From positions 186,001 through 250,000 of IMG/VR virus record IMGVR_UViG_3300047558_000137: a stretch of DNA of 64,000 nucleotides; one strand, 5' to 3'. The position numbers were made by a program, and so were the translations under genes. Position 1 is the stretch's first letter; every line of letters starts with the position of its first letter. Shown here in pieces: positions 145 through 63,440 of this stretch. The notes under the pieces are model-generated. The model searched no databases, had not been told where the DNA came from, and saw nothing but the letters and a program-made list of their open reading frames with translations.

Positions 145-475
145 GTGGTAGCTTATTCTGTTACGAGGAAAGCTACCGAAACCCTAGGCGGCGTTTAGGC
201 TACCAATGCGAACTGTGAGTCGTTTGCGTTTACTTTTTTGCTTCTACGGCCGGGAAACCCCAACCCTAAGGGCTTTCACATTGCCCTGCTGTCCACTCTG
301 TTACTCTTGACCCAATCGATCCTGTGTCAGGCCCATTATAAAACACACTAAGCACGACTACATTGCCAAAAAGACCTGGAAGTCAAAAACAATGTACATA
401 ATGTGTTTTATGGTGGACCTGGGCGGCACTGCCCCGCCGTCTTGAATCCTTTTCTCTTTGCTTCATACAGCAATA
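145..475 (-). ncRNA. ssrA: Circularly permuted (two-piece) tmRNA, tag ANDSQFALVA
   Basis: On the minus strand the acceptor piece ends GGCGG-GGCAGTG-CCGCC-CAGGTCC-ACCA (CCA end at 411). An intervening hairpin follows at 335-410. The coding piece starts GGGCCTG at 334 and pairs with CAGGTCC to give G3:U70. The tag ORF is at 227-195 and AACAGAA is at 162-156. Outer ends are approximate. Confidence 0.93.
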
Positions 476-477
476 AC

Positions 478-9002: not shown

Positions 9003-10538
9003 ATGAACATCTATTTCTATAGTCCAAGCTCGGGCTATGTGAGACCGGAACAAGATCCGGACCTTTATCTAAACACCGTACCATTATACCTTGATAGCTA
9101 CATTAAAAATGAAGCTCCGCATCTCTATGAGCATATAACCTGGTGCAAAATACAATTATTAAGAAAGACCCAACAAGAAATTGTTGAACAACTAAAAGAA
9201 TACAACGCCGACATGTTATGTCTGAGCAGTTATATCTGGAACCATGTGCAAGTTATGGCTATAGCAACAGGAATTAAGCAATTCCTGCCAAACCTTATTG
9301 TAGTAGTTGGTGGTCCAAGTATTGATGTTTACCGAAATAGAGAATTTTTAAATCAACATATAGATGTTGACTATGCGGTTTATTCCCAAGGCGAAGAAGC
9401 ATTTGTGGAAATATTGGAGCATGAAATAAATCAGAGACCAATTGATCGGTTACGTGCATCAAATTTAAGTTGGCGAACTTCAACTGGAATTAGAGTTGCT
9501 GATCACAGAGTTTATAAAAAAACCAGTGGTAGTTATTATATCGATTCTAAACATTTACTTGAGCAAATAGTAGCAGATACAGAATATACTGGATACGAAT
9601 TTGCATTGCCTTATGAGACTAGTCGAGGGTGTCCGTTTAAATGCAGTTTTTGCGATTGGACCTCGGGTATTACACATAAGGTAAGCAAACGTCGATTTAA
9701 TTATCGAGATGAGTTTGAATTGTTTGGTAATCTAAACATATTGAAATTTTTTATGGCCGATGCAAACATTGGGCAATGGGACGACGACGTTGGTGTTGCC
9801 CATGCTATGTCTGATTTAAAACGTGAACGCGGATTCCAATTTCAAATACAAGGATGGAATGCTAGTAAAACCCACAAGAAAAATGCATTTGAAATGATGG
9901 ATATATTAGTCGGTGCAGACATTCTATATGCGCCTAAAATATCAGTGCAGGATATAAATGACCAAATTCTATTAGAAAATGATCGTCCTGATATCCCGTG
10001 GACTGAACATCTTACATATATACAACAATTAAAAAATAAACATCCGCATAAACCAGTAATAATAGAAATTATGATTGGACTGGTAGGACAAACTCGAGCG
10101 AGTATGCGTACTATGTTTAGAGAAATCTCTTTACATAAGTTTGTGTTTTTCCCACACCTATGGATTATGCTTCCCAATTCTCCCGCAGGTTACGACTTAG
10201 AATTTCGAAATAAAAATGAAATTGAAACTAGAATAATTGAATGCAATTATTTTATGAGTGAGCCAGCGGAAGGTGTAGTTAGCACCAAAAGTTATTCTCA
10301 AGAAGACTATGCCTACTTTGTTTTATTAACAGCCATTTATAGAATAATACAAATGGAATTTAAGCCGAAATACATCAGCATGAGTATTGATCAAATTGAA
10401 TCAACTGTTGACCGTTTAGTTTCTTCTGTAGTATTCCAAAAGGTATTTAAACAAACAGTATCCAATCTTCAACATAGTGTCGATTTATTTGACGCGGATG
10501 TCATAAGACAAATGGTATCGTTTTACTTAGTTGAATAA
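9003..10538 (+). CDS. B12-binding-domain radical SAM enzyme
   Basis: LSSYIWN..VVGGPS..GEEAF (B12-binding domain); ETSRGCPFKCSFCDW CxxxCxxC. Confidence 0.88.
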   Translation: MNIYFYSPSSGYVRPEQDPDLYLNTVPLYLDSYIKNEAPHLYEHITWCKIQLLRKTQQEIVEQLKEYNADMLCLSSYIWNHVQVMAIATGIKQFLPNLIVVVGGPSIDVYRNREFLNQHIDVDYAVYSQGEEAFVEILEHEINQRPIDRLRASNLSWRTSTGIRVADHRVYKKTSGSYYIDSKHLLEQIVADTEYTGYEFALPYETSRGCPFKCSFCDWTSGITHKVSKRRFNYRDEFELFGNLNILKFFMADANIGQWDDDVGVAHAMSDLKRERGFQFQIQGWNASKTHKKNAFEMMDILVGADILYAPKISVQDINDQILLENDRPDIPWTEHLTYIQQLKNKHPHKPVIIEIMIGLVGQTRASMRTMFREISLHKFVFFPHLWIMLPNSPAGYDLEFRNKNEIETRIIECNYFMSEPAEGVVSTKSYSQEDYAYFVLLTAIYRIIQMEFKPKYISMSIDQIESTVDRLVSSVVFQKVFKQTVSNLQHSVDLFDADVIRQMVSFYLVE

Positions 10539-15858: not shown

Positions 15859-16023
15859 TCAATCAATTTGTACGTCAGCAATCTTCCCGTTACGGAAAAT
15901 GTAATACGAATTTACTAATCCGTAGCTAACCCAAATGCAGTTGTTACCCGCTTGCATACTGTAGTTTTCAATGCCACGTTTACGCAGATCTTCAATGACC
16001 AGCATCTGCTCAAACTCATTCAT
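15859..16023 (-). CDS. Small hypothetical protein (54 aa)
   Basis: Manual translation MNEFEQMLVIEDLRKRGIENYSMQAGNNCIWVSYGLVNSYYIFRNGKIADVQID. Confidence 0.6.
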   Translation of the reverse strand: MNEFEQMLVIEDLRKRGIENYSMQAGNNCIWVSYGLVNSYYIFRNGKIADVQID

Positions 16024-16222
16024 TTTTACCCCAAATAAATTCTTCTAAGTCGTAGAGGACTTCTGCTTTACTGTTTCCACTTTTAGAAACGATTGTCATA
16101 CATTCTTTGACGAGCAACTCGGCGAACTTTTCTTTGTCAAAGATCCAACCTTCACCGCTTGTTGATGTTGGCTCAATGTAAGTCGTAGCCTGTTCAGCAA
16201 GTTGTTTAATTCGTTCGTTCAT
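16016..16222 (-). CDS. MNERI-family small protein
   Basis: MNERIKQLAEQA..EKFAELLVKEC. Confidence 0.8.
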   Translation of the reverse strand: MNERIKQLAEQATTYIEPTSTSGEGWIFDKEKFAELLVKECMTIVSKSGNSKAEVLYDLEEFIWGKNE

Positions 16223-16419
16223 ACATATACTCCTGATTCGTATCCTTCTACGCCTTTGATGACTTCTTCAAGTGTGTAAGTATTACCAAACAACTCAATT
16301 TCTTCGGGCCAGTCGTCCATTAGCCCTTCTTGCAATCCGTATGATTGTAGTTTTCCGTTTGGCAAACGCTTACCAGCGAGGTCAAATCCTGCTAAAAACG
16401 GTTTTAATTCTTCGTTCAT
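16219..16419 (-). CDS. Hypothetical cargo protein
   Basis: ATGA-coupled within the array. Confidence 0.7.
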   Translation of the reverse strand: MNEELKPFLAGFDLAGKRLPNGKLQSYGLQEGLMDDWPEEIELFGNTYTLEEVIKGVEGYESGVYV

Positions 16420-16613
16420 TCTTCATCACTCCTTAACGGCACGGTATAACTGCTGGCACCATGAATCTTCATCATGTGTTGGGCCAAAAGCACAGCATTT
16501 TCTCGGTTTGTGGCAAACACAGGATAAAAACTAATACTGGCTTGATACTCACCATTGGGTTTTTCTCCCAACTGAGTGAAACTCAAATTCACCACAAACT
16601 CTTTGGCTTTCAT
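16416..16613 (-). CDS. Hypothetical cargo protein
   Basis: Starts at GGAGTTGAAGAATGA and ends in the variant GGAGTGATGAAGAATGA. Confidence 0.7.
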   Translation of the reverse strand: MKAKEFVVNLSFTQLGEKPNGEYQASISFYPVFATNRENAVLLAQHMMKIHGASSYTVPLRSDEE

Positions 16614-16624
16614 TCTTCAACTCC

Positions 16625-16900
16625 TTATTGAAATTGCCGACGGCTACGACCGATTTCATCACACTTGGCAACAAACTTTGGATTCAATTCAAATGGTTTA
16701 TTGATTGGATCGGTGTTCATCATACGCTTGAGTTCATCAGCATTAGCAAGAATCAACTCAGCGAACTTTTTAAGTTCATCTTCGATAAAATCTTCAGCCC
16801 AAAAGTATTCGTGACCGTTTTGGTAATTACCAACCGTGTAGATAGCACCATTGGTTTCAAACCCAGCCCGTAGAGCAAGTTCTTTTAATCGTTCATTCAT
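16625..16900 (-). CDS. MNERI-family small protein
   Basis: MNERLKELA..KKFAELIL. Confidence 0.8.
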   Translation of the reverse strand: MNERLKELALRAGFETNGAIYTVGNYQNGHEYFWAEDFIEDELKKFAELILANADELKRMMNTDPINKPFELNPKFVAKCDEIGRSRRQFQ

Positions 16901-17136
16901 TCTTCAACTCCAAAATGTTCTTTAATATTGTCTGAGCAGGCCTTAGTGACTATTGCTACCCTAATTGGATAGATTCCGAATCTTTCAACATCTTTGTGTT
17001 TATAACAAGCATCGGCACATTCCCGAACAATTAACTCAGCAAATTTTTCAACATCGCTGTCATCTGAAAAATGCCACTCTCCATTATCGTAACGGAATCC
17101 TGTCTGTTCAGCAAGTTGTTTAATTCGTTCGTTCAC
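16897..17136 (-). CDS. MNERI-family small protein
   Basis: MNERIKQLAEQ..EKFAELIVREC..KEHFGVEE (GTG start). Confidence 0.85.
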   Translation of the reverse strand: MNERIKQLAEQTGFRYDNGEWHFSDDSDVEKFAELIVRECADACYKHKDVERFGIYPIRVAIVTKACSDNIKEHFGVEE

Positions 17137-17357
17137 GGCACCCTCACAAAATCAACATTTTCAACTGCGTCAGTTTTGAACACTCTACCCAGGATGCGAC
17201 TACCAACCGTACCACTCTTACTCAAGTAGTAATCATTGTTTGGCATCAACGAACCGTAGATAGTGCCGCCCACTTTTACTCCACTACCAGGAATCTTTTT
17301 CAATAGCTTTGCTTTGAAAACAACAAGTAAATTAGGATTACTATTATGGATAATCAT
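17133..17357 (-). CDS. Hypothetical cargo protein
   Basis: Coupled between repeat blocks. Confidence 0.7.
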   Translation of the reverse strand: MIIHNSNPNLLVVFKAKLLKKIPGSGVKVGGTIYGSLMPNNDYYLSKSGTVGSRILGRVFKTDAVENVDFVRVP

Positions 17358-17578
17358 TCTTCAACTCCGAAATGTTCTTTGTATCGGTTTAGCATCCGTT
17401 CAAACGCATTGAACGCTAACTCTTGTCGATTCAATTCAATGCATTCCTTTACAATCAACTCGGCGTGCTTGACAGAAACAATGGCATAGTAAATGTCATT
17501 GTATCGGAGTGCTGGTGGCACTTTGCTATCAGCATATTCCAACGCTTGAGTGTATAGTTCTCCAATTCGTTCATTCAT
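17354..17578 (-). CDS. MNERI-family small protein
   Basis: MNERIGEL..KHAELIVKEC..KEHFGVEE. Confidence 0.85.
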   Translation of the reverse strand: MNERIGELYTQALEYADSKVPPALRYNDIYYAIVSVKHAELIVKECIELNRQELAFNAFERMLNRYKEHFGVEE

Positions 17579-17581
17579 TCT

Positions 17582-17803
17582 TCAACTCCGAAATGTTCTT
17601 GCCACATACGCTTGGGTTCGCTGATTATTGGTTGCTTTGCCATGAAACCATTCAGATTCTACCATTGCATCCAACACCATTCGTTCCATCAACTCTACAT
17701 ACTTTTCTGCGTATGCTTGACTATACGGCATTGCTGTAGTTTCGTTTTGCTTGACAGCATAGATACGAGCCTGTTGCTCAAGTTCTTGAATTCGTTCGTT
17801 CAT
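17582..17803 (-). CDS. MNERI-family small protein (3' block read in a shifted frame)
   Basis: MNERIQELEQQA..EKYVEL. Ends RTFRS over the DNA AGAACATTTCGGAGTTGA. Confidence 0.75.
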   Translation of the reverse strand: MNERIQELEQQARIYAVKQNETTAMPYSQAYAEKYVELMERMVLDAMVESEWFHGKATNNQRTQAYVARTFRS

Positions 17804-18108
17804 TTCATTGCCCCCATAATCAGGTTAGCAAACATTTGTTCTTGCTTGCTGATAGTTTCTTCAATGTCTGCATCAAGATCACGGAACTCAACATTAGAAC
17901 GGTTGCGTTGCAGAGTATAGCCGCGGCGTGCCATGAAGTGCAGGAACACATCAACAGTGTAGATCTGTGCAGTTATAAAATCAATCTGTGGCTCAGGCTT
18001 AACACGACTGTGGATTGTTTTAAATAGATCCTTGCAGTCGTGAAAGTCTTTCATGCACTCGGGCAGGTGGCGCTTTTCTTCTAACCAAGCTTCAAGATTC
18101 TTTGACAT
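17800..18108 (-). CDS. Conserved phage hypothetical protein
   Basis: HLPECMKDFHDCKDLFK..YTVDVFLHFMARRGYTLQR. Confidence 0.75.
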   Translation of the reverse strand: MSKNLEAWLEEKRHLPECMKDFHDCKDLFKTIHSRVKPEPQIDFITAQIYTVDVFLHFMARRGYTLQRNRSNVEFRDLDADIEETISKQEQMFANLIMGAMK

Positions 18109-18289
18109 CTGTGTCTCCTTGCGACATTACTTTTGAGTTGGGAATAGAAACCTTAAACCCTGCAGGATGTTCTGCAATGATATGCATACAACCATGAGCG
18201 TTTGTTTCGGGCAGAGTGTGACTAATATAAGTCAGCACCGTACCCGGTGTGATATCGTAGTGCTGTTCTATTACAACAAACTTTTTCAT
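18092..18289 (-). CDS. Hypothetical protein
   Basis: ORF with RBS in the operon. Confidence 0.65.
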   Translation of the reverse strand: MKKFVVIEQHYDITPGTVLTYISHTLPETNAHGCMHIIAEHPAGFKVSIPNSKVMSQGDTDVKES

Positions 18290-18291
18290 CT

Positions 18292-18555
18292 TTAATCCTT
18301 AAAACGCTCACGCATCACTTCCAACACGTACAACGCACTGTTGACTCGTTTGTTGACTTCTTCGGCAGAGAGACCATCATTGAATCCAGTTTGAGCGATG
18401 CGTGTGGCAGTTTGTTTAACTGTTTCAGTGAATTCAACGATCATCAACTCGGCAAAGTGATTTACCATTGCTGACAATTCTTCACTCATGCCAGCAATAC
18501 CTGTTGGGTTTTTGCTAACATACTCTTTAATATCTTCTGGTTTAATATAATTCAT
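18292..18555 (-). CDS. Divergent MNERI-related protein (start MNYIK)
   Basis: Carries HFAELMI over the block-B DNA at 18445. Confidence 0.6.
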   Translation of the reverse strand: MNYIKPEDIKEYVSKNPTGIAGMSEELSAMVNHFAELMIVEFTETVKQTATRIAQTGFNDGLSAEEVNKRVNSALYVLEVMRERFKD

Positions 18556-18677
18556 TTTGCAACTCCATTCAAATAGCGCCATCCGAGTCGTTGTCCCGAA
18601 TAATAAAACAATTTGCCATACCAGTTTTGAAACTGACCCATGGGCTGTGCCAAACGGGTTTTGTCATCGATGTACAT
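18552..18677 (-). CDS. Small hypothetical protein (41 aa)
   Basis: Manual translation MYIDDKTRLAQPMGQFQNWYGKLFYYSGQRLGWRYLNGVAK, ending in GGAGTTGCAAAATGA. Confidence 0.55.
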   Translation of the reverse strand: MYIDDKTRLAQPMGQFQNWYGKLFYYSGQRLGWRYLNGVAK

Positions 18678-20324: not shown

Positions 20325-20945
20325 ATGTTCGATATTTTTAAAGGCGTAGACAAAGGCATGCTATCCAAATTGGTATTGCTACACATCGCCGTAATTATTG
20401 TAAGTAACGCTCTAGTCTCAATCCCAGTAGAAATTCTAGGATTCAAACTAACATGGGCAGCATTTACATTCCCATTGGTTATTTTAGCCACTGACTTGAC
20501 TATCCGTTTAATTGGTAAACAGATTGCAAGGGCAACTATTGCAGCCGCTTACCCGTTTGCCATTCTTGGCAGTATTGCGGTAGTGCTTGCAGAAGGCGCA
20601 CCCGAATCGGTTGCTATGCGTATTGGCTTTGCCAGTGCCACAGCGTATCTAATTGGTACATTGTTGGACGTATACGTATTCCAAATCATTCGTGAGCGTT
20701 TCACTAAGCAATGGTGGGCAGCACCAGCATTAAGTGCTATTGTTGCTAACATTATCGACAGTTATACATTCTTCGCTGTAGCATTTAACAACAGTGCAGA
20801 CGAGTATATGGCCGCTAACTGGATGGAAATTGCCATGTCGCAATCCATTCTTAAAATTGCAGTTGGTTTGATTTTCTTCTTACCAGCGTACGGCGTTTTA
20901 TTATCTTACCTCAAGAATCGTATGCACGATACTGATCAAGGTTAA
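20325..20945 (+). CDS. yhhQ: preQ0/preQ1 (queuosine precursor) transporter
   Basis: SNALV..TWAAFTFPLVILATDLT..LDVYVF..WWAAP..HWMEIA-like..FFLPAYGVLL closely follows E. coli YhhQ. Confidence 0.9.
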   Translation: MFDIFKGVDKGMLSKLVLLHIAVIIVSNALVSIPVEILGFKLTWAAFTFPLVILATDLTIRLIGKQIARATIAAAYPFAILGSIAVVLAEGAPESVAMRIGFASATAYLIGTLLDVYVFQIIRERFTKQWWAAPALSAIVANIIDSYTFFAVAFNNSADEYMAANWMEIAMSQSILKIAVGLIFFLPAYGVLLSYLKNRMHDTDQG

Positions 20946-26991: not shown

Positions 26992-28224
26992 ATGTTCTCC
27001 TTAGATAAGTTTTATAATATTCTTCACAATAATTTGATTGCACCATTACATCATACAGGCAGATCAGTTTATTTTTATCCATTTGGTACCTATAACACTA
27101 CTGTTCAGTTACATGATAAGTTCGAAACACCCTGTGATCAAGTTGAAACTAGAACTCTATATGCTGAAAAATCATCATTGCAATGTTATTTCTTTGATCA
27201 AGAACCTCTATACAATTATACATTACCTATACTTAAAAATACACTATTATTTCCTACATATCAAGCAAAAGTTTTTCCACGATACCTAGGTATACTTGCA
27301 AACAGTGAACATTCGGACATTAAAAATCAATGTCTCAGAGATAACAATTTACAAGATTGGTATTATTTTTATCACGGCTTTGCTGCGCTTGATTGGTTTA
27401 GAGATTTTCAGTATGTAAAGCCAAATAGCTTTAATCGAATTAACAAAGTATTTATATGTTACAACCATTTAATATCTAAATATAGATCTTATAGACTGCA
27501 CCTAGTAAGCAATTTAATAGAACAGGACCTTGTTAAGCATGGTAGTGTTAGTTTAAGCCTTTGTGATGAAAATGGAACTTGGCGAGATACTATTGAAAGC
27601 CCAACAAACCCATTAGATAGTCGTGCTAGGATCAAAATATACAATTCACTGAAACAACTTGATGGGCCGTTAATTGCAGATACCCCTAGCGTAAACGGAA
27701 CCTACAGTTCTAACTTAAATCTAGATCATTTAACTGATGCATTGTTCCATATAGTAACAGAAACCGTGTTCTATCAGAATAAATTACACCTAACAGAAAA
27801 GACATTTAAGCCTATTGTTGCCCAACGCCCATTTATACTTGCGGCTGCACCAGGAAATTTGGCATATCTACGTAGTTACGGATTTAAAACCTTTGATCGA
27901 TGGATAGACGAGAGTTACGATCAAGAAACAGACAACTACCTACGTATAGAAATGATAACTCAAGAAATTGCTCGACTATGCCAAATGTCTAAATCTGAGC
28001 TAGATGATATGTATCTAGATATGCAGGATACATTAACTTATAACTATCATCATTTTTACAACAAATTCAAAGAGATAATAGTCGACGAACTAGTAGATAA
28101 CTTCGACAGTATACTAACTAAATTCAATAATGGTAAACAACCTGGCAATCACAGCAAGTATCACCATCGATATGAGTTTGAACCTGGCTATTTAAATTCT
28201 GTTAAACAATTACTATTGAGCTAA
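26992..28224 (+). CDS. Putative glycosyltransferase-like phage protein
   Basis: HIVTETVF..LTEKTFKPI..YGFKTFDRWIDESYD; paralog of 21305-22357. Confidence 0.55.
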   Translation: MFSLDKFYNILHNNLIAPLHHTGRSVYFYPFGTYNTTVQLHDKFETPCDQVETRTLYAEKSSLQCYFFDQEPLYNYTLPILKNTLLFPTYQAKVFPRYLGILANSEHSDIKNQCLRDNNLQDWYYFYHGFAALDWFRDFQYVKPNSFNRINKVFICYNHLISKYRSYRLHLVSNLIEQDLVKHGSVSLSLCDENGTWRDTIESPTNPLDSRARIKIYNSLKQLDGPLIADTPSVNGTYSSNLNLDHLTDALFHIVTETVFYQNKLHLTEKTFKPIVAQRPFILAAAPGNLAYLRSYGFKTFDRWIDESYDQETDNYLRIEMITQEIARLCQMSKSELDDMYLDMQDTLTYNYHHFYNKFKEIIVDELVDNFDSILTKFNNGKQPGNHSKYHHRYEFEPGYLNSVKQLLLS

Positions 28225-28977
28225 GTCAACGTTTTTGTAAATAAACTCAGCTTCGGGTATACGTGTGCGCCCGTTTTTACTGCCTAGCACAACAACTCTA
28301 CGAAGTCCACGCTCAGTTTTAACAGTTAGAATAATACACCCACCGGCTGCATTAGTTGTGCCAGTCTTACTTACAACAAATTCGTGCTTATGTCCTATTA
28401 ATGGATTGGTCTGTTTAAAGATGAGCCACTTCTTTTTGTTTTTAATTTCAACTTTAGTTTTGTTAGAGGCACTAACAATTAAATAATTCTTTTCAGCAAG
28501 TTGTAATAATAGCAATAGGTCTTCGGCTGTGCTAGTATTACCTGGTAGCAGTCCTGTTGCGTCTACTAGAGTGGTATGTCGTAGTCCCCAACGATATGCA
28601 TTGGCATTCATATCACCAATACAGTTACCGTATCCGCCACGATAATTGCGACATAATAGATCTGCGGCATGATTATCACTACGCACTAACGCCATTTCAA
28701 TTAAATCTTGGCGAGTAACCATTAGGCTATTGTTATAACGTATATACTGATTTAAATCTTGCTTTGCATCCATCACTGTTAACACAGTGAATATCTTGGT
28801 AATGGAAGCAATTGGTCTAACAGTGTCTGTGTCCTTGCTGCCCAATACTCGATTGTTCTCGTCTGCAACGAGCCAGCTTCTGGCTGTAAGGTCATCAGTG
28901 TCGTCAATAGTTGCGGCAGGTTTTGCCCAGCAATTGAGGCCGGCAAGTAATGCCAGAACAAGTATAATTTTAGCCAT
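28213..28977 (-). CDS. Peptidase S11 D-Ala-D-Ala carboxy/endopeptidase (PbpG-like)
   Basis: Signal peptide; SxxK (SITK), SDN and KTG motifs. Confidence 0.88.
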   Translation of the reverse strand: MAKIILVLALLAGLNCWAKPAATIDDTDDLTARSWLVADENNRVLGSKDTDTVRPIASITKIFTVLTVMDAKQDLNQYIRYNNSLMVTRQDLIEMALVRSDNHAADLLCRNYRGGYGNCIGDMNANAYRWGLRHTTLVDATGLLPGNTSTAEDLLLLLQLAEKNYLIVSASNKTKVEIKNKKKWLIFKQTNPLIGHKHEFVVSKTGTTNAAGGCIILTVKTERGLRRVVVLGSKNGRTRIPEAEFIYKNVDLAQ

Positions 28978-29021
28978 ATGTCGCAATATTCTTCTAGTAA
29001 CATTAGTTATTTAACCATATG

Positions 29022-45421: not shown

Positions 45422-45808
45422 TTAAGCAATCCAGCCCTGTCCGGATATATCATGATACCAAGTATAAAAGTTAGCAGGAATACTAAAAGTCCATGGATCC
45501 AATGTATCAATGTAACACTTTTTATTACTTGATAAGTGCTGATATTTTGGTAACACCTCTAGCCCATTCACTGTTAATCCAATATCTAATCCGCTTGTGC
45601 CTTCTTTAAACTCTATTAGATTAACATCCAGTTTAACAGGATCAAATAGATCTAATGTAAATGTAATTTTATCTACATTGATAATAAATCCGTTGAGCTT
45701 TACGAAACTATCCGTCTGGCCATAACGAGTTATTAATAGATCAACTACTAATTTTTGGTGTGTGTCAATAGCCGAGAGATCTGAGAAAGTCTTTATATCT
45801 TGGTACAT
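45422..45808 (-). CDS. Hypothetical protein
   Basis: Overlaps the end of the radical SAM gene. Confidence 0.6.
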   Translation of the reverse strand: MYQDIKTFSDLSAIDTHQKLVVDLLITRYGQTDSFVKLNGFIINVDKITFTLDLFDPVKLDVNLIEFKEGTSGLDIGLTVNGLEVLPKYQHLSSNKKCYIDTLDPWTFSIPANFYTWYHDISGQGWIA

Positions 45809-47063
45809 AATCTAAAATGGAATTCTTTCGTAGTGTTTCAAATCCCTTAAGGAATCTTATTAACTGACTTCTGTGTTGGTCTGCATCCTCGGGGACACTG
45901 TAGTTCTGCATAAAATTATAGTAGTCTATAATGGTGTCTGCAATTACCTGATTAATTCGGCTGTTATTGCGTAGGTTCAATTGTCCAGTGTGAACAAGTC
46001 CATGGCGTAGAATCACCGAAGCTATCTTATCGACAACTTCCTGTCTGATATCATCGGGCATAATCTCAATACGCAGGCAGGCTGGATCACTTAGTATATC
46101 GCAACTTTCAGCAATGACATTTTTCTCTATCATATATTCAAACAGTTGATCTAGTTCGTATGCTGTAAAAATATTAGGTGTAATACGGAGAGAAATGTAT
46201 AACCCACTTTGCTTTCGCAATTCAAGAAAGCTATCAATGTTGGCAAGTATGTCCCCAATCTTCCCGGGATACCTAACATAGTCATTTAAGTCTGTAACCG
46301 ATTCAATGCTAATGCCCATATGAAATTCTTTAAACTGTTTAATTAACTGTTCAACACGTTCGTTGTAAATTGTACCGTTGGTTGTTGTACCAACAATAAT
46401 TTCTTTGCTTAATCCTGCATCTATTAATGCCTGACATATATCATAGAAAGCTGAATCAAATAGCGTTTCGCCACCAAGGAAATGTATGTACTTAACTGGA
46501 ATTGTTTTTAGCTCTGAGACAAATTGATCCACTGCATCCCGAGTCCAACTGTGATATCGGTCGGGCTGTTTAAAAGTCTGGCTGTCAATTTGATGTAGCT
46601 TAACGTAGTCTTGTTCTAATCTACTGCTGGCGATGGGGTCACACATGATACAGGCGCTGTTACAAACATTGCCCAAATCAATTTGTAGATCAACTGGGTG
46701 CATGTCAGCTAAGCCACTATTATTTTGGCTGTGTTGAAAATGGCTGTAGTGCGGACTGCTTAGAGTCTGCAATTCAAATTGATCAGTTATTCCGCTTTTT
46801 AATAACTGTCTGCGGCGGCCGCTTAGTTTGCCAAATTGATCTTGGTAATAACAGTTTGCACAACCTGCGGGCTGTTGCCCTTCTAAAAATTGACTGCGTA
46901 GACTACGCATACGATCACTGTTATAAAACTCCATAACAGATGCGGTGCGTATATTCATAGGAGAACTGCCCCGATCTTTAAACCAGCGGCATTCTTGAAA
47001 GTCCCCGTTGTAGGTTAATCTAACGTGGAACCATGGACTAGAACAAAAAGTATTTTTTAACAT
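45765..47063 (-). CDS. Radical SAM enzyme with an N-terminal Twitch/SPASM-like Cys cluster
   Basis: FCSSPW..CANCY; GNVCNSACIMC; LGGET; TTNGT. Confidence 0.85.
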   Translation of the reverse strand: MLKNTFCSSPWFHVRLTYNGDFQECRWFKDRGSSPMNIRTASVMEFYNSDRMRSLRSQFLEGQQPAGCANCYYQDQFGKLSGRRRQLLKSGITDQFELQTLSSPHYSHFQHSQNNSGLADMHPVDLQIDLGNVCNSACIMCDPIASSRLEQDYVKLHQIDSQTFKQPDRYHSWTRDAVDQFVSELKTIPVKYIHFLGGETLFDSAFYDICQALIDAGLSKEIIVGTTTNGTIYNERVEQLIKQFKEFHMGISIESVTDLNDYVRYPGKIGDILANIDSFLELRKQSGLYISLRITPNIFTAYELDQLFEYMIEKNVIAESCDILSDPACLRIEIMPDDIRQEVVDKIASVILRHGLVHTGQLNLRNNSRINQVIADTIIDYYNFMQNYSVPEDADQHRSQLIRFLKGFETLRKNSILDYVPRYKDFLRSLGY

Positions 47064-49735: not shown

Positions 49736-50019
49736 ACTGTATCTTTTCTACTCAATATATCCCACACCATGCCATGCCAAGGCTTAAATGCAACATCGAC
49801 TCGAGTTGGGTCGTGCATGGCCCAATCAAGTTCCCACCACTCCGAGTTTGTGTCTAGGTAGACGATGCGAACACGATTGCCGTAGACTGAACGATAATAA
49901 TTTACTACCGCTTCAGCATCATTTGTGATCGTCATGCCGCCATCAAAGGGTGACAGGTCACGCAAGAACACAATGTTGTTTTTTTCATCGCGTTCAATAA
50001 TACCACTTCTTGCTCTCAT
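49732..50019 (-). CDS. Conserved phage hypothetical protein
   Basis: TITNDAEAVV..RIVYLDTNSEWWEL. Confidence 0.7.
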   Translation of the reverse strand: MRARSGIIERDEKNNIVFLRDLSPFDGGMTITNDAEAVVNYYRSVYGNRVRIVYLDTNSEWWELDWAMHDPTRVDVAFKPWHGMVWDILSRKDTV

Positions 50020-50022
50020 GAT

Positions 50023-50310
50023 TTATCGCCATTCATTTGCACGGTCGATTTCTTCTTGCGTAAACTGACCACCTGAACGGTCAGGGTTCTGTGCCCAACT
50101 ATCTTGTGTGGCTTTTTCGCAACACACTTCCACATCCTGCAAGATACGCTTGAGTTCGTCAATGTTAACCGCAAGGAAAGAAACTGTAGCATACAATGCC
50201 GCATCCTCGGCCATAGTACCAAGACAAAGGACCTTTCGGTGTGCTTCCAACAATTTTTCCTTGCCGGCAATTGTGTTTTTCAGATTATCTCTTACTGTAT
50301 GGATGTTCAT
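50023..50310 (-). CDS. Hypothetical cargo protein
   Basis: Starts at a repeat; ends SW..NPDRSGGQFTQEEID. Confidence 0.7.
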   Translation of the reverse strand: MNIHTVRDNLKNTIAGKEKLLEAHRKVLCLGTMAEDAALYATVSFLAVNIDELKRILQDVEVCCEKATQDSWAQNPDRSGGQFTQEEIDRANEWR

Positions 50311-50480
50311 TCTTCAACTCCAATATAAACTGCACGGCGATTCTTGTCGCTGACTTCGCTAAACCACGCAACAAAATCATCGGCCCCTTGTTTAGTATCA
50401 AACTTTTCTTCGTGATGAACTTTGTATTCTTGAGAATCCCAACGCTTGTGAATTCTGACTTCAACGATATGTTGTTTCAT
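50307..50480 (-). CDS. Cargo small protein ending GVEE (57 aa)
   Basis: Manual translation MKQHIVEVRIHKRWDSQEYKVHHEEKFDTKQGADDFVAWFSEVSDKNRRAVYIGVEE. Confidence 0.75.
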   Translation of the reverse strand: MKQHIVEVRIHKRWDSQEYKVHHEEKFDTKQGADDFVAWFSEVSDKNRRAVYIGVEE

Positions 50481-50710
50481 TCTTCAACTCCGAAATGTGC
50501 TTTCAAATCATTAGCAATAGCAAATGCTATGATCCACTTTGTATCTTCGCCGCGTTCATATTTGTAATCACGCTCGATTTTGGCGGAACATTCCTTGACA
50601 ATCAACTCGGCGAATCTTTGGGTATATGCTTTGTGGAATTCATCGCCTCGGTGGTCAGCAACAACATCATCTTCGGCCTGTTCAGCAAGTTCTTTAATTC
50701 GTTCGTTCAT
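50477..50710 (-). CDS. MNERI-family small protein
   Basis: MNERIKELAEQA..RFAELIVKEC..HFGVEE. Confidence 0.85.
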   Translation of the reverse strand: MNERIKELAEQAEDDVVADHRGDEFHKAYTQRFAELIVKECSAKIERDYKYERGEDTKWIIAFAIANDLKAHFGVEE

Positions 50711-50895
50711 TCTTCAACTCCCAAGTGATTAACGATTGCCCGAGCATTATTGTAATCAACTACATCGCAACATTCCTTGATTATCAATTCAGCGAACTTT
50801 TCTGAATACGCAATCAGCCCTTGTTCGTGGGGCAAATCTTGGTTGCGGTATTGTGCCCTGGCTTGATTCATAAGTATTGCTATTCGTTCGTTCAT
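50707..50895 (-). CDS. MNERI-family small protein
   Basis: MNERI..EKFAELIIKEC..HLGVEE. Confidence 0.85.
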   Translation of the reverse strand: MNERIAILMNQARAQYRNQDLPHEQGLIAYSEKFAELIIKECCDVVDYNNARAIVNHLGVEE

Positions 50896-51089
50896 TTTTC
50901 ATCATCCTGCAGTTTGGTTGCCAGTGCTTGACGAATTTGGTCAAACATTGACGCATTATGATTTAAGGCACTGGCAAATTTGTCTTTGATTTCAGCATCA
51001 AATAACTCGGTAGGATTACCCGTCTTGTCTGCTGTAATACGCTGTTCGGCAAGTTTTGCCAGTTCGTTAAGTTTATCGTTTAATGTCAT
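50892..51089 (-). CDS. Hypothetical cargo protein
   Basis: Lies between block C and block A. Confidence 0.7.
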   Translation of the reverse strand: MTLNDKLNELAKLAEQRITADKTGNPTELFDAEIKDKFASALNHNASMFDQIRQALATKLQDDEK

Positions 51090-51313
51090 TCTTCAACTCC
51101 AAAATGTTGTTTAACTGCGTCAAGGGCAGAGGTCGGATTCATATGTCCACGCTGTGATTTTACAATCACCTTCCATGTTTCCATAGCAACCAACTCGGCG
51201 AACTTTACTCGCCACTCATCTTGCCATTGCGTAAGCAGTAGAATTCTTTCTGTGGGAAGTTCATCTGCCCATCGTTTAGCCTCTACCATCAGTTCTTTAA
51301 TTCGTTCGTTCAT
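51086..51313 (-). CDS. MNERI-family small protein
   Basis: MNERIKELM..KFAELV..HFGVEE. Confidence 0.85.
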   Translation of the reverse strand: MNERIKELMVEAKRWADELPTERILLLTQWQDEWRVKFAELVAMETWKVIVKSQRGHMNPTSALDAVKQHFGVEE

Positions 51314-51527
51314 AGTCCAACTCCACTTCTCGTTCAACATAGGTTTTTGTTGCCATCTTTAACACAACTGCGGCACTATGGCGCCACATATCTTCACGCA
51401 TACCCAGATAACTTAACCCAAGTGCCTTAAAAGCATTGTCAAGTCCATCGTAGTCAAGTGTTGGTGCCGCAAGATGAAACTCTTTGGCACGATGCTTAAA
51501 CTCTTCCCAGGAACACGCTAATGTCAT
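51297..51527 (-). CDS. Hypothetical cargo protein
   Basis: Ends inside block A in another frame (DYERTN*). Confidence 0.7.
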   Translation of the reverse strand: MTLACSWEEFKHRAKEFHLAAPTLDYDGLDNAFKALGLSYLGMREDMWRHSAAVVLKMATKTYVEREVELDYERTN

Positions 51528-51700
51528 TCTTCAACTCCAACGAGTTCTAAAGTCCATCCAACGGGAGGTTCTTCGTTTCGTTTTTCATATCTCTTATTCA
51601 TTGTGTCACACGCTTTTAGTCTCGCTTGTTCCTCATTGATAGCACGAACGGTGACGGTTGCCGTTTTCCAGTAAGCATATTTGAAGGTATATTTGTTCAT
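51524..51700 (-). CDS. Cargo small protein ending GVEE (58 aa)
   Basis: Manual translation MNKYTFKYAYWKTATVTVRAINEEQARLKACDTMNKRYEKRNEEPPVGWTLELVGVEE. Confidence 0.75.
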   Translation of the reverse strand: MNKYTFKYAYWKTATVTVRAINEEQARLKACDTMNKRYEKRNEEPPVGWTLELVGVEE

Positions 51701-51903
51701 TCTTCAACTCCGAAATGTTTTGCAATTCTTTCACCGGCATCGTCACTGTAGTTACGGTTGGTAAAGTTTGTACCCAATGTGGCACATTCCCGAACAATCA
51801 ACTCGGCGAACTTTTCTTTATTAAAAATCTTTTGCGGAGGTGCATAGTTGTATTCCGCAAGGTCGTAAGATTCTTCAATTAGTTCTTTAATTCGTTCGTT
51901 CAT
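51697..51903 (-). CDS. MNERI-family small protein
   Basis: MNERIKEL..EKFAELIVREC..HFGVEE. Confidence 0.85.
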   Translation of the reverse strand: MNERIKELIEESYDLAEYNYAPPQKIFNKEKFAELIVRECATLGTNFTNRNYSDDAGERIAKHFGVEE

Positions 51904-52109
51904 ACCAGTTCTCCTGTAGCATCGTTGACACAGCCTCGGTAGACTGCCTTGAAAAATGATTTTGTGGGTGGTCGTTTATTATCAAACCATTCAATGTAAG
52001 CAGATGCCTCTTCTTTGGTTGAGTATTTGGTTGCAAATGTAACATCGGTCAAGTTAATCTTACCGTTCTCTACGGGGTGGACTTGGACGATGTGAAAGTA
52101 TTTGTTCAT
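51900..52109 (-). CDS. Hypothetical cargo protein
   Basis: Resembles 50307-50480. Confidence 0.7.
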   Translation of the reverse strand: MNKYFHIVQVHPVENGKINLTDVTFATKYSTKEEASAYIEWFDNKRPPTKSFFKAVYRGCVNDATGELV

Positions 52110-52273
52110 TCTTCAACTCCTTGAACCATTAGGTCCATTTCTTTTGCCAAATCTTCCATTAGATGGCGACCTTGTAGTTTCGAACCAATAAAACGGTTGT
52201 CGTAGTAGTCACTGTTCTGGCGCTCACGCTCGTCTAAGTATTCTTCTAAAACTTCTGAAAATTTACGACTCAT
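52106..52273 (-). CDS. Cargo small protein ending GVEE (55 aa)
   Basis: Manual translation MSRKFSEVLEEYLDERERQNSDYYDNRFIGSKLQGRHLMEDLAKEMDLMVQGVEE. Confidence 0.75.
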   Translation of the reverse strand: MSRKFSEVLEEYLDERERQNSDYYDNRFIGSKLQGRHLMEDLAKEMDLMVQGVEE

Positions 52274-52515
52274 TCTTCAACTCCGAAATATGTTTTCGTA
52301 TTAAGACGAATCTTTTCAATCAGTTCAGCAGACTTCTTATCGTTGTTACCGATACAATCTAACTGTTGCAACAGTAGAATGTCATCAAACTTCTTCACAA
52401 TCAACTCGGCGAACTTTTCATCAAAATACGCTTGCCTCTGTACATCATTAAACCCAATTCTTTGATTTACGGTACACCGTGCCTGATTGGCAAGTTCCCT
52501 GATTCGTTTGTTCAT
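52270..52515 (-). CDS. MNERI-family small protein (start MNKRIRELA)
   Basis: MNKRIRELANQA..EKFAELIVK..YFGVEE. Confidence 0.85.
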   Translation of the reverse strand: MNKRIRELANQARCTVNQRIGFNDVQRQAYFDEKFAELIVKKFDDILLLQQLDCIGNNDKKSAELIEKIRLNTKTYFGVEE

Positions 52516-52617
52516 TTTAATCCTTAGTATAAAGCCAGCGGCGAAATCTTGTTGATAATGTGGTTGCAACATTTACTCCAATAATCACAACCACTAACAT
52601 AATTAAAATAGTTTCAA

Positions 52618-52803
52618 TCATTTTACTTCCTCAAGTACATAATAGTCAGCATCAAACACTTGCCTGAAACGACTTGCCAACATAATAGCGTGAGATTCGT
52701 TATCTGCTTTAATATCCATTGTAACACTAGCAGCCTCATTTGTATAAAGGCTATTGTCAAGGTTAGTAAAGAATAACTCTACTTTATACGCTGTCATTTG
52801 CAT
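52618..52803 (-). CDS. Hypothetical protein
   Basis: Start revised to MQMTAYK. Confidence 0.55.
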   Translation of the reverse strand: MQMTAYKVELFFTNLDNSLYTNEAASVTMDIKADNESHAIMLASRFRQVFDADYYVLEEVK

Positions 52804-62102: not shown

Positions 62103-63440
62103 TTATACGAATTGTTTAATACTGTATTTAAAGGTTTGGCTAGCAGTGGCAGCACAAATTACGCTACCATTGCCATGTATCCATAAGTTAGCATTTAATG
62201 TTGTACCAGATTCGGTATACTCGTCATCAAACACTACTTCGGATCCAGTGTTGTTGAATTTTAATACGCCATATCTGTAGTTGTTACTTGAATCATTGAT
62301 CTGATAATCAATTGCGCCTGCACCTGTAGCTACAGATGTAATAGTATTGCTACCAGTAGATAGACTTGCTTGACGTCCTGTACCAACTTTTAAGGCACCA
62401 CTATAGATACCTGTGCGGTCACCTGATCCAAATGTGTCGCCAAAACTATAAACATTGCCCGACATTGAAGACACTGGTGTTGCTACTGTGCTACTAAAAT
62501 AGTTGTTTAGACTAACAAGGCCGGAAATAAACGTTCCCGGTTGTATACCATAAGAAGTTAAACTTGTAAATTCACAATTTACTACTCTAACAGTATCAGC
62601 ATATCCTGTTGCACCAATGCCCACCAATCCACCGTCAAAAGTACAATTTCTAAAAGTAGTCGATTGTGCTGTATTCACTGAAGAAGAAAAACGTACAACT
62701 TGAAGTGTAGTTGCCGCACCACAAAACTGAACGTTTTCAAAAACAGAGTCATTGGTACTATCAAGTACAACAACTGGACTTGTGCCACTAGTTACTTCAA
62801 ACTTTATTCCAGACACAAATATATGTGTAGGCATAGCTGCACTATTTGTTCCAAAATAGGCACCAACTTGATATAAGCTATCAGTTGGCTGAATGATTGT
62901 TGTTGATGTACTTTGAATTATTGTATTTTCTTTACCATCGCCTACTAAAACACAATATGGCGGAATTAACAGTTCGCTTGATACTATATAAGTTCCAGCT
63001 GGAAAATATATTGGTCTACGAACATTAGGATGTGTGGTTAGAACAGAAGAAACGTAGATTTGTTGTATGGCACGATTAATCGCATCAGTATCATCTGTTG
63101 TGCCATCACCTGCGGCACCAAAATCTTTTACAGAAACGTGTTCATCTAATACGCTTTGAATACTGCGTGTAATTGGTGACAAACTTGTAGCACCTGTTTG
63201 GCTGGTATAGCCAGCATCTGTGCCTTTGAATGTGTAACTGAACAAGAAACCCAGAAAGTCACTGTACTCAGTTAAAATTTCTGTTACACCTTCTGTAGGT
63301 GCGCCTTCTGTTAGTGTGCCATTACCAATAAACAAACGGCGTTGGTCAACACTCCAGCCTAATTCAGCACTTGCCAATTGTGGCAAATCTTGCTGTAGAC
63401 CGCGGCGGTGCTGAATTTTTGAGATTTGTACGATTGCCAC
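62103..63440 (-). CDS. Virion protein with an Mtd-N-like start and a pectate-lyase-3 beta-helix
   Basis: IQHRRG..LASAELGW..LFIGNG; SVKDFGAAGDGTTDDTDAINRAI..YFPAGTY. Confidence 0.8.
   Translation of the reverse strand: MAIVQISKIQHRRGLQQDLPQLASAELGWSVDQRRLFIGNGTLTEGAPTEGVTEILTEYSDFLGFLFSYTFKGTDAGYTSQTGATSLSPITRSIQSVLDEHVSVKDFGAAGDGTTDDTDAINRAIQQIYVSSVLTTHPNVRRPIYFPAGTYIVSSELLIPPYCVLVGDGKENTIIQSTSTTIIQPTDSLYQVGAYFGTNSAAMPTHIFVSGIKFEVTSGTSPVVVLDSTNDSVFENVQFCGAATTLQVVRFSSSVNTAQSTTFRNCTFDGGLVGIGATGYADTVRVVNCEFTSLTSYGIQPGTFISGLVSLNNYFSSTVATPVSSMSGNVYSFGDTFGSGDRTGIYSGALKVGTGRQASLSTGSNTITSVATGAGAIDYQINDSSNNYRYGVLKFNNTGSEVVFDDEYTESGTTLNANLWIHGNGSVICAATASQTFKYSIKQFV

What the first reader, a model, noticed from the sequence alone, without database searches (positions are those of the whole stretch)
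50023..52515. Repeat-punctuated gene-cassette array with a three-block modular small-protein family
Seen: eight exact copies of GGAGTTGAAGAATGA (block C) lie 164-438 bp apart. Each supplies an SD, the stop codon of the upstream ORF (GVEE*) and the ATG of the next ORF. Five paralogs follow the pattern block A (ATGAACGAACGAATT..; MNERI), variable segment, block B (AAGTTCGCCGAGTTGATTGT; KFAELIV), variable segment, block C. The variable segments show no visible similarity to one another. Unrelated cargo ORFs are slotted C-to-C or C-to-A. Inference: the constant blocks act as recombination handles. They would allow whole self-translating cassettes to be added, removed or reordered, and the two variable segments to be swapped between paralogs. 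That would be an integrase-free, integron-like diversification system for early effector proteins. No integrase or reverse transcriptase is present in this window.
Basis: partly seen in the sequence, partly recalled or inferred. Interest (0 to 1): 0.88.

Follow-up and report, generated by a model that had tools for sequence, protein, structure and literature searches.

The report
Shuffling small-gene family in jumbo phage
A giant uncultured phage carries arrays of tiny genes from a very large, undescribed family whose three short constant DNA blocks mark where variable gene pieces and whole neighbouring genes have been swapped between phages, giving a natural mix-and-match library of small acidic proteins.

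Summary
Eight exact GGAGTTGAAGAATGA copies lie at 50307-52284. Chance expectation is 0.14 copies. The window is part of a 374-kb IMG/VR jumbo-phage contig.

The MNERI / KFAELIV / HFGVEE genes belong to a very large family with no annotation: 9,152 cluster representatives, no Pfam or PHROG match, and found only in uncultured phages.

- Codons inside the blocks are fixed far beyond background usage (CGA 87% against 12%; GCC 78% against 20%; GGA 94% against 24%).
- The two variable segments reassort. 72 gene pairs share segment 1 and 50 share segment 2, but only 5 share both.
- 44 of 92 homology breakpoints between related phage contigs lie within 25 nt of a block, against 8% at random positions.

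Best explanation: short-homology recombination at nucleotide-conserved blocks. Block C also serves as a translational-coupling ribosome-binding site.

It is not an integron: no integrase, no attC-like inverted repeats. It is not a PeSL either: no promoter-terminator motifs. "Early effector" is untested.

I rate it a new variant of known motif-mediated modular shuffling, in an undescribed protein family of unknown function.

The parts
52270..52284 (-). Block C copy 1 (GGAGTTGAAGAATGA): end of family gene 52270-52515, start of cargo 52106-52273
52106..52120 (-). Block C copy 2: end of cargo 52106-52273 (..QGVEE*), start of cargo 51900-52109
51697..51711 (-). Block C copy 3: end of family gene 51697-51903, start of cargo 51524-51700
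51524..51538 (-). Block C copy 4: end of cargo 51524-51700 (..VGVEE*), start of cargo 51297-51527
51086..51100 (-). Block C copy 5: end of family gene 51086-51313, start of cargo 50892-51089
50707..50721 (-). Block C copy 6: end of family gene 50707-50895 (HLGVEE*), fused directly to block A of family gene 50477-50710
50477..50491 (-). Block C copy 7: end of family gene 50477-50710, start of cargo 50307-50480
50307..50321 (-). Block C copy 8: end of cargo 50307-50480 (..IGVEE*), start of cargo 50023-50310
52270..52515 (-). Family member (81 aa, MNKRI..KFAELIV..YFGVEE)
51697..51903 (-). Family member (68 aa). AlphaFold2 model: helix, beta-hairpin (segment V1), long helix (block B and start of V2), loop (rest of V2), helix (start of block C)
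51086..51313 (-). Family member (75 aa)
50707..50895 (-). Family member (62 aa)
50477..50710 (-). Family member (77 aa)
52106..52273 (-). C-to-C cargo (55 aa, MSRKF..). The same small gene sits next to family genes in L070, L018 and L152, with tails GVEE, GVEA and GIKE
51900..52109 (-). C-to-A cargo (69 aa, MNKYFHIV..). It belongs to a cargo family with its own conserved junction GGAGAACTGGTATGA joined to block A in L102, and close variants of it in L080 and L174
51524..51700 (-). C-to-C cargo (58 aa), no relatives found in the fetched loci
51297..51527 (-). C-to-A cargo (76 aa). It reads through a degenerate, frame-shifted block C (51310-51324) and overlaps block A
50892..51089 (-). C-to-A cargo (65 aa)
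50307..50480 (-). C-to-C cargo (57 aa). A distant relative of the MNKYFHIV cargo family whose usual ..GCVNDETGELV tail is replaced by block C (..IGVEE*)
50023..50310 (-). Cargo (95 aa) starting at block C copy 8. Relatives in L025, L140 and L073 have different ends
16016..18566 (-). Second array: four exact block C copies (16610, 16897, 17354, 17575), one near copy (18552) and six family members (16016-16222, 16625-16900, 16897-17136, 17354-17578, 17582-17803, 18292-18555), interspersed with cargo ORFs

Best explanation
The locus is one of two polycistronic arrays of small accessory genes in a 374-kb uncultured jumbo phage. It is built around members of a very large, undescribed family of acidic proteins of about 70 aa.

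Each family gene has three blocks conserved at the DNA level: A (start, MNERIKEL..), B (central helix, ..KFAELIVREC) and C (end, ..HFGVEE*). Two unrelated variable segments, V1 and V2, lie between the blocks.

Block C has two roles. It ends the family protein, and it supplies GGAG, a 7-nt spacer and an overlapping ATGA that couple translation of whatever gene follows.

The blocks share 15-32 nt of exact identity among hundreds of otherwise dissimilar genes. I infer that general short-homology recombination or template switching, during replication or co-infection, crosses over inside them. This exchanges V1 modules (A to B), V2 modules (B to C) and whole genes or foreign ORFs (C to C, C to A), both within and between phages. 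Repeated exchange in turn keeps the blocks homogeneous at synonymous sites. The outcome is a combinatorial repertoire of V1 x V2 surfaces on a constant small scaffold.

Shown: the block anatomy, the codon-level conservation, the independent assortment of V1 and V2, and the enrichment of breakpoints at blocks.

Inferred: the recombination pathway; that diversification is the selected benefit; and that the proteins are binders of host or defence factors.
For: Anatomy and non-randomness.

Family size and lack of annotation:
- More than 120 IMG/VR stretches carry the exact 21-mer (capped).
- More than 1,014 proteins match in the 5.8-billion-sequence set.
- 9,152 cluster representatives match at E<=1e-3 and 2,138 at E<=1e-10.
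- No Pfam or PHROG hit for the five paralogs of this locus or for 127 aligned members.

Codon conservation, measured on 400 unique genes from 160 loci against the codon usage of long ORFs in the same loci:
- R4: CGA 87% against 12%.
- L8: CTT 67% against 17%.
- A36: GCC 78% against 20%.
- E37: GAG 85% against 26%, while E42 is GAA 92%.
- L38: TTG 82% against 25%.
- G68: GGA 94% against 24%.
- The pattern is the same in loci fetched only through a codon-degenerate pattern.
- 68 of 71 GVEE-ending genes selected through block B carry the exact 15-mer.

Reassortment:
- 72 pairs share V1, 50 share V2 and only 5 share both.
- Of 32 pairs with at least 93% V1 identity, 26 have V2 similarity below 0.6 (median 0.33, near the random-pair level). 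Likewise for 19 of 24 V2-sharing pairs.
- Three-way example: the L090 gene combines V1 of one L001 gene with V2 of its neighbour.
- Window gene 16016-16222 shares a 100% identical V1 with a gene in a 364-kb phage contig (L102), but the V2 is unrelated.

Breakpoints:
- Identity tracts of module-sharing pairs end in blocks A, B or C.
- 44 of 92 internal homology boundaries between related contigs lie within 25 nt of a block, against 8.2% of random positions.

Block C behaves as DNA rather than only as a protein tail. Of 247 copies, 41 end non-family ORFs and 21 have no in-frame ORF. One window member is frameshifted yet keeps block C intact.

Block C is not the phage's generic ribosome-binding site. 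Of 16 window genes with GGAG plus a 7-nt spacer, 11 use TTGAAGA and the other five all differ.

The assembly is sound. The same array was recovered from a second sample with 1 mismatch in 20.6 kb. A whole module with both flanking blocks has a median length of 126-129 nt.

Structure: pLDDT 88; V1 forms a beta-hairpin and the rest of V2 a loop, on a three-helix scaffold. The proteins are acidic, median pI 4.9.
Against: - No recombination event has been observed directly. Everything is inferred from comparing metagenomic assemblies.
- Exact identity in the blocks is short: 15-32 nt within the window, and a median of 11 nt for block B between random family pairs. That is at or below the homology usually needed for efficient RecA-type exchange.
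- No recombinase was found in this window. The rest of the 374-kb genome was not examined.
- About half of the homology breakpoints between related contigs are not at blocks, and at least one mosaic junction lies inside a variable segment. Block-independent illegitimate exchange therefore also occurs.
- Part of block C's conservation can be explained by its ribosome-binding role alone.
- Protein function is unknown, so the benefit of diversification is conjecture.
Confidence: 0.7

Rival explanations
1. An ordinary, fast-diverging paralog family. On this view the blocks are just the conserved protein core plus a ribosome-binding site, the variable segments diverged by point mutation and indels, and no special recombination occurs.
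For: The blocks coincide with the predicted scaffold helices. Block C contains a canonical GGAG, 7-nt spacer and ATG, and half of all window genes overlap the upstream stop as ATGA.
Against: Codon choice is position-specific and contrary to background usage: GAG at one Glu and GAA at the others, and rare CGA and CGG for Arg. V1 modules 93-100% identical are joined to V2 modules with similarity near the random-pair level, and the reverse. Breakpoints are about fivefold enriched at blocks. Divergence by mutation cannot produce identical half-genes next to unrelated halves.
Confidence: 0.06
2. The nucleotide conservation serves an RNA-level function. For example, block C could be a shared translational operator or nuclease site, comparable to T4 RegB cutting at GGAG or RegA binding at start regions (my own knowledge). 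That would co-regulate all array genes, and recombination at the blocks would be a by-product.
For: The identical 7-nt spacer TTGAAGA occurs in 11 of the 16 window ribosome-binding sites with GGAG at this spacing, whereas other genes use varied spacers. Block C persists where it is not translated as GVEE.
Against: It does not explain the fixed codons in blocks A and B, which lie inside ORFs. The one candidate A-B pairing (GAACTT with AAGTTC) shows no meaningful covariation: 4.90 pairs against 4.84 in shuffles, with few compensating changes. No Rfam family matches the arrays. The idea is compatible with the best explanation rather than exclusive of it.
Confidence: 0.12
3. The mosaics are chimeric metagenome assemblies, created where the assembler jumped between paralogs or strains at the repeated blocks.
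For: All comparative data are short-read metagenomic contigs. Repeats of 20-50 nt recur many times per genome.
Against: The window array was assembled identically from a second sample, with 1 mismatch in 20.6 kb. Other loci recur at 99.8-100% identity. A module with both flanking blocks is usually 150 nt or less (93% for A-V1-B, 86% for B-V2-C), so a single typical read would span both junctions; read lengths were not checked, so this is inference. The codon conservation in the blocks cannot be an assembly artefact.
Confidence: 0.05
4. A dedicated, enzyme-driven cassette system (integron-like or shufflon-like). Its recombinase would be encoded elsewhere in the genome and would recognise the blocks as sites.
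For: The core is exact and invariant at 15 nt, all copies share one orientation, and C-cargo-C units exist.
Against: No integrase or recombinase was found among the 41 ORFs of at least 150 aa that were scanned. There is no inverted-repeat or attC-like structure at the junctions. Exchange also occurs at blocks A and B, which differ in sequence. The family occurs on contigs from 4 kb to 374 kb with varied neighbourhoods.
Confidence: 0.05

Closest known systems
PeSL (promoter-early stem-loop) cassettes of T4-type phages (Arbiol et al. 2010, PMC2839356; Comeau et al. 2014, PMC4122927)
   Same: Short conserved sequences are repeated between small non-essential ORFs in hyperplastic regions of large lytic phages. 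Homologous recombination between the copies explains insertions, deletions and replacements between related phages. The motif also has an expression role.
   Different: PeSLs are intergenic promoter-plus-terminator units. Here the repeats are coding and translation-coupling sequences, with no promoter or terminator signal. They sit inside and at the ends of one protein family, they also shuffle sub-genic modules, and they are shared across a far wider set of phages. Mini-circles were demonstrated for PeSLs and were not tested here.
gp38 / gp37 tail-fibre adhesins of T-even phages: conserved glycine-rich motifs separating hypervariable segments (Trojet et al. 2011, PMC3157838, citing Tetart et al. 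1996, 1998)
   Same: Conserved motifs form a structural core and separate hypervariable segments. Exchanges occur within or near the conserved motifs and create chimeric proteins with new combinations of variable segments.
   Different: No homology to gp38. These are multi-copy, non-structural proteins of about 70 aa arranged in arrays, not a single virion adhesin. The conserved blocks also join neighbouring, unrelated genes.
Integron gene-cassette arrays
   Same: Arrays of short, same-orientation, promoterless ORFs are separated by a recurring sequence, and cassette content varies between relatives.
   Different: No IntI integrase was found, there is no attC imperfect palindrome, and there is no evidence of site-specific excision. 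The recurring sequence here is translated and acts as a ribosome-binding site.
Polymorphic toxin loci (CdiA/Rhs), where a conserved motif marks a swappable C-terminal domain (my own knowledge, not tested here)
   Same: A short conserved coding motif marks the boundary at which unrelated downstream modules are exchanged by homologous recombination.
   Different: Those are large secreted bacterial toxins with paired immunity genes. Here there is no toxin or immunity signature, and there are two variable modules per tiny protein.

Membership tests
Integron | Tyrosine recombinase IntI next to the array | tested here: not met
   Pfam scans of 40 of the 45 window ORFs of at least 150 aa show no integrase or recombinase, and a PHROG scan of a 41st ORF shows none. 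The rest of the 374-kb contig was not examined.
Integron | attC sites (imperfect inverted repeats) at cassette boundaries | tested here: not met
   Only two inverted repeats occur in 49900-52700, and neither lies at a junction. The 15-mer is not palindromic.
Integron | Cassette excision as circles by site-specific recombination | not testable with these tools
   Needs raw reads or PCR.
PeSL regulatory cassettes | Composite sigma-70-like promoter plus stem-loop terminator between ORFs | tested here: not met
   Promoter-like and terminator-like sites occur at shuffle level in both arrays. The junctions are overlapping ATGA with no intergenic space.
PeSL regulatory cassettes | Indel and replacement breakpoints between related phages fall at the repeated motif | tested here: met
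   44 of 92 breakpoints lie within 25 nt of a block, against 8.2% at random positions.
gp38-type modular adhesin | Conserved motifs alternating with hypervariable segments that reassort | tested here: met
gp38-type modular adhesin | Homology to gp38 / tail-fibre adhesin | tested here: not met
   No Pfam, PHROG or PDB sequence match, and no fold match.
Diversity-generating retroelement | Reverse transcriptase plus template/variable repeat pair differing at adenines | tested here: not met
   No reverse transcriptase among the scanned ORFs. The variable segments are unrelated in sequence and length, not point variants of a template.
MNERI-KFAELIV-HFGVEE small-protein family (undescribed; defined here by HMM) | Full-length match to the family profile, with blocks A, B and C in order | tested here: met
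   The five genes in the flagged locus and six in the second array seed or match the HMM. There are 9,152 representatives in the 1.84-billion-protein library.

The most novel reading that the evidence does not exclude
Uncultured, apparently freshwater phages may share a pan-genomic combinatorial library of tiny acidic proteins. Nucleotide-conserved linkers would be maintained, through second-order selection or molecular drive, because they let roughly 60-nt V1 and V2 specificity modules and adjacent genes be reassorted between co-infecting phages without any dedicated enzyme. That would act as a repertoire-generating mechanism for host-takeover or anti-defence binders. It would be mosaicism operating routinely below the level of the gene and across thousands of genes.
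Probability: 0.35. Interest if true: 0.85.

Novelty: new variant of a known kind. Interest (0 to 1): 0.74.

Why it matters
Phage mosaicism is usually described at the level of genes or gene blocks. Motif-mediated shuffling has been documented in only a few cases, such as T4 PeSLs and the gp38 adhesin.

Here one undescribed family, with more than 9,000 clusters at 50% identity, shows exchange of modules of about 60 nt between constant blocks of 20-30 nt. The two halves of a 70-aa protein have essentially independent histories, and the same blocks splice in unrelated genes.

If this is confirmed, it gives three things:
- A tractable natural system for measuring how little homology phage recombination needs.
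- An explanation for codon-level conservation without any RNA structure.
- A large set of scaffolded variable mini-proteins whose targets, possibly host or defence factors, could be screened.

It also warns annotators that the recurrent ..GVEE* tails on unrelated ORFs are junction sequence rather than evidence of homology.

Tried and rejected
- Close relatives among isolated phages. Megablast and blastn of the locus found none, tblastn of a family member found none, and a 59-nt C+A junction query gave only chance-level hits apart from one metagenome-derived record.
- An orthologous array in a diverged relative, searched through a flanking protein. This returned only the same phage from a second sample. 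It confirms the assembly but says nothing about indels.
- Functional annotation. Pfam, PHROGs, a PDB sequence profile, and Foldseek against PDB and BFVD gave nothing, or only uncharacterised proteins of uncultured phages.
- An RNA stem between block A (GAACTT) and block B (AAGTTC). Pairing is barely above shuffled, with no compensatory pattern, so I rejected it.
- Known RNA families in the arrays: none. The only Rfam hit in the window is a tmRNA elsewhere.
- PeSL-like promoters or terminators, and attC-like inverted repeats: none.
- Block C as the phage's generic ribosome-binding site: rejected, because other GGAG sites use varied spacers.
- Host inference from genome contigs. All 17 hits are MAG contigs of scattered phyla, probably mis-binned phage DNA.
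- Not done: scanning the remaining 310 kb of the contig for recombinases, testing whether the family co-occurs with any enzyme, and formal recombination tests such as PHI or GARD.
Full report
**1. The observation**

The 15-mer GGAGTTGAAGAATGA occurs 12 times exactly and once with two mismatches. All copies are on the minus strand. Dinucleotide-preserving shuffles expect 0.14 matches.

Read on the minus strand, every copy is GGAG, a 7-nt spacer and ATGA. The upstream ORF ends ..GVEE* and the next ORF starts at the overlapping ATG.

Five genes in the flagged locus carry blocks A, B and C in order: 52270-52515, 51697-51903, 51086-51313, 50707-50895 and 50477-50710. Six more are in the second array. 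Among these 11 paralogs the two variable segments, V1 and V2, are no more alike than shuffled sequence.

Unrelated ORFs sit C-to-C (52106-52273, 51524-51700, 50307-50480) or C-to-A (51900-52109, 51297-51527, 50892-51089).

**2. Where the window comes from**

The window is positions 186001-250000 of IMGVR_UViG_3300047558_000137, a 374,314-bp viral contig. It has no nucleotide relative among 50,697 deposited phage genomes.

Its genes include:
- ribonucleotide reductase, IMPDH/GMP reductase, UvdE and ClpP;
- radical-SAM and B12-binding proteins;
- a cell-wall hydrolase and virion proteins distantly like those of cyanomyoviruses and Salicola phage SCTP-2.

No integrase, reverse transcriptase or recombinase appears among the 41 of the 45 ORFs of at least 150 aa that were scanned. 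About 99 of 108 genes are on the minus strand, and half overlap the preceding stop as ATGA.

A second sample yielded a 30.9-kb contig that matches the array region with 1 mismatch in 20.6 kb. The array is therefore not a one-off assembly product.

**3. The family is very large and undescribed**

So does a fully codon-degenerate pattern for KFAELIVREC.

One member finds more than 1,014 proteins at E<=1e-3, all named 'hypothetical' and none with a Pfam domain. A 127-sequence profile finds 9,152 representatives of 50%-identity clusters (2,138 at E<=1e-10) among 1.84 billion proteins.

Neither Pfam nor PHROGs matches any of the 127 aligned members at a meaningful level. Nothing is found among isolated phages. 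In GTDB genomes the motif occurs only on MAG contigs of scattered phyla, some named for lakes or reservoirs. I found no paper containing the motifs.

**4. Test 1: synonymous sites**

An HMM built from the 11 window paralogs recovers 400 unique genes in 160 loci. In the conserved columns, codon choice is position-specific and far from the codon usage of long ORFs in the same loci:

| Position | Dominant codon | Frequency | Background |
|---|---|---|---|
| R4 | CGA | 87% | 12% |
| L8 | CTT | 67% | 17% |
| K34 | AAG | 86% | 36% |
| A36 | GCC | 78% | 20% |
| E37 | GAG | 85% | 26% |
| L38 | TTG | 82% | 25% |
| R41 | CGG | 53% | 5% |
| G68 | GGA | 94% | 24% |
| V69 | GTT | 89% | 38% |

By contrast, E3, E7, E42, E70 and E71 are GAA at 92-100%.

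Sampling bias does not explain this:
- Block A was never part of a search pattern.
- The same preferences appear in the 53 loci fetched only through the degenerate block B pattern.
- Among 152 genes chosen through block B alone, 71 end in GVEE, and 68 of those carry the exact 15-mer.

The blocks therefore do not vary freely at synonymous positions.

**5. Test 2: do V1 and V2 share a history?**

At thresholds of at least 75% nucleotide identity and at least 70% coverage, 72 gene pairs share V1, 50 share V2 and only 5 share both.

Of 32 pairs with at least 93% V1 identity, 26 have V2 similarity below 0.6, with a median of 0.33 against 0.26 for random pairs. Of 24 pairs with at least 93% V2 identity, 19 likewise have V1 similarity below 0.6. 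All but one of these pairs come from different loci.

Concrete cases:
- The L090 gene carries the V1 of one L001 gene and the V2 of its upstream neighbour.
- Window gene 16016-16222 has a V1 100% identical to a gene in a 364-kb contig (L102), joined to an unrelated V2.

Among the 400 genes there are 341 V1 clusters and 355 V2 clusters.

**6. Test 3: breakpoints**

For module-sharing pairs, the high-identity tract ends inside block B in most cases. On its other side it ends inside block A or C.

I examined 14 related contig pairs. Of their 92 internal homology boundaries, 44 lie within 25 nt of a block. The figure for random positions in the same loci is 8.2%. Examples include kilobase-long flanks that stop exactly at block A, and 235-nt C-to-C units that sit at different distances from the flank.

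The other half of the boundaries are not at blocks. One junction (L102 3306-3521 against window 16625-16900) lies inside V2. Block-independent exchange therefore also happens.

**7. Block C behaves as DNA, not only as a protein tail**

Of 247 exact copies in the loci plus the window:
- 185 end a family gene;
- 41 end an unrelated ORF of at least 35 aa;
- 21 have no in-frame ORF. Many of these are preceded by the extended ..AAAGAACATTTC sequence joined to foreign sequence.

The downstream gene is a family member in only 61 cases.

Window member 17582-17803 is frameshifted near its end. Its block C bases are intact, but the protein ends ..TFRS*.

Cargo genes are themselves conserved across phages:
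- The MSRKF/MRKF cargo recurs next to family genes, with tails GVEE, GVEA or GIKE.
- The MNKYFHIV cargo family has its own junction, GGAGAACTGGTATGA (with close variants in L080 and L174), fused to block A. This is seen in the window and three other loci.
- The window paralog 50307-50480 has that tail replaced by block C.

Block C is not simply this phage's preferred ribosome-binding site. Of 16 genes with GGAG at 7-nt spacing, 11 use TTGAAGA and the other five spacers all differ.

**8. What the protein looks like**

AlphaFold2 with the family alignment gives pLDDT 88.3 and pTM 0.71. The model has:
- helix 3-11 (block A);
- a beta-hairpin, residues 13-27 (V1);
- helix 29-46 (block B and the start of V2);
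- a loop (the rest of V2);
- helix 56-64 (the start of block C).

No PDB fold matches. BFVD returns only uncharacterised proteins of uncultured phages. The proteins are acidic, with median pI 4.9 and median net charge -6.

My functional reading is inference. The constant helices form a scaffold and V1 and V2 are presented surfaces, so the family may bind variable host or defence targets. Nothing here tests the timing of expression.

**9. Mechanism**

The arrays have no promoter or terminator enrichment and no inverted repeats at the junctions. No known RNA family matches them. Exact identity between blocks within the window reaches 32 nt (A), 23 nt (B) and 26 nt (C).

The best-supported model is short-homology recombination or copy-choice between blocks, within a genome or between co-infecting phages. 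Repeated exchange would also homogenise the blocks. That explains the fixed codons without invoking RNA structure; the single candidate A-B stem shows no covariation. Block C additionally works as a coupled ribosome-binding site, so any ORF joined at that point is translated.

Assembly chimerism is unlikely for three reasons:
- A module plus both flanking blocks has a median length of 126-129 nt.
- Arrays recur identically across samples.
- Codon conservation cannot be an assembly artefact.

**10. Comparison with known systems**

Functionally this resembles PeSL-mediated modular shuffling in T4-type phages (PMC2839356, PMC4122927). It also resembles the conserved-motif and hypervariable-segment design of gp38 adhesins, where exchanges occur in or near the conserved motifs (PMC3157838).

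It is a member of neither. There are no promoter-terminator units and there is no homology to gp38. It fails the defining features of an integron (IntI, attC) and of a diversity-generating retroelement.

The new elements are:
- the handles are coding and translation-coupling sequences of one very large, unannotated family;
- exchange operates on modules of about 60 nt within a 70-aa protein;
- the same handles also splice in unrelated genes across many phages.

**11. Verdict**

I rate this a new variant of a known kind. Confidence in the mechanism is about 0.7 and interest is 0.74. Direct evidence from read-level junctions or an experimental cross is still missing.

Noticed in passing
window 144-523 (-): A permuted (two-piece) tmRNA gene: Rfam RF04321 at 102 bits, overlapping the alpha-proteobacterial tmRNA model RF01849 at 57 bits. 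ARAGORN reported no tmRNA. Short pieces of it recur at 84-86% identity in L130 and L066.
   Followed up: partly
window 16016-18566 (-): A second repeat-punctuated array with four exact copies and one near copy of the 15-mer and six more family members.
   Followed up: yes
window 17582-17803 (-): A family member with a frameshift near its 3' end. The block C nucleotides are intact, but the protein ends ..TFRS* instead of ..HFGVEE*. The same TFRS tail occurs in other loci.
   Followed up: partly
window 51794-51813 vs 51697-51716 (and every family gene): Blocks B and C share TTCG(CC)GAGTTGA, offset by 2 nt. As a result F-A-E-L and F-G-V-E are encoded by nearly the same bases in two reading frames. 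Unexplained; it may be chance.
   Followed up: no
window 51900-52109 (-); L102 112-315; L080; L174: A separate small cargo family (MNKYFHIV..) has its own conserved coupling junction, GGAGAACTGGTATGA (..TGELV*; close variants in L080 and L174), fused to block A. This is seen in the window and three other loci.
   Followed up: partly
L102 3306-3521 vs window 16625-16900: A non-family N-terminal half is joined to the same C-terminal half (..TDPINKPFELNPKFVAKCDEIGRSRRQFQ*) that ends a window family member. This mosaic junction lies outside the blocks.
   Followed up: no
window 62103-63440 (-): A tailspike-like ORF combining a Major-tropism-determinant N-terminal domain (Mtd_N) with a pectate-lyase-like domain.
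   Followed up: no
window 8281-8901, 28213-28986, 45765-47063, 9003-10538, 20325-20945: Auxiliary genes unusual for a phage: ClpP protease, a D-Ala-D-Ala carboxypeptidase, a radical-SAM/SPASM protein, a B12-binding-domain protein and a Vut_1-type transporter.
   Followed up: no
L182-L198 (genome contigs): All 17 genome-collection hits to the 21-mer are MAG contigs assigned to unrelated phyla (Bacteroidota, Actinomycetota, Burkholderiales, Planctomycetota and others). They are probably phage DNA binned into bacterial MAGs.
   Followed up: no
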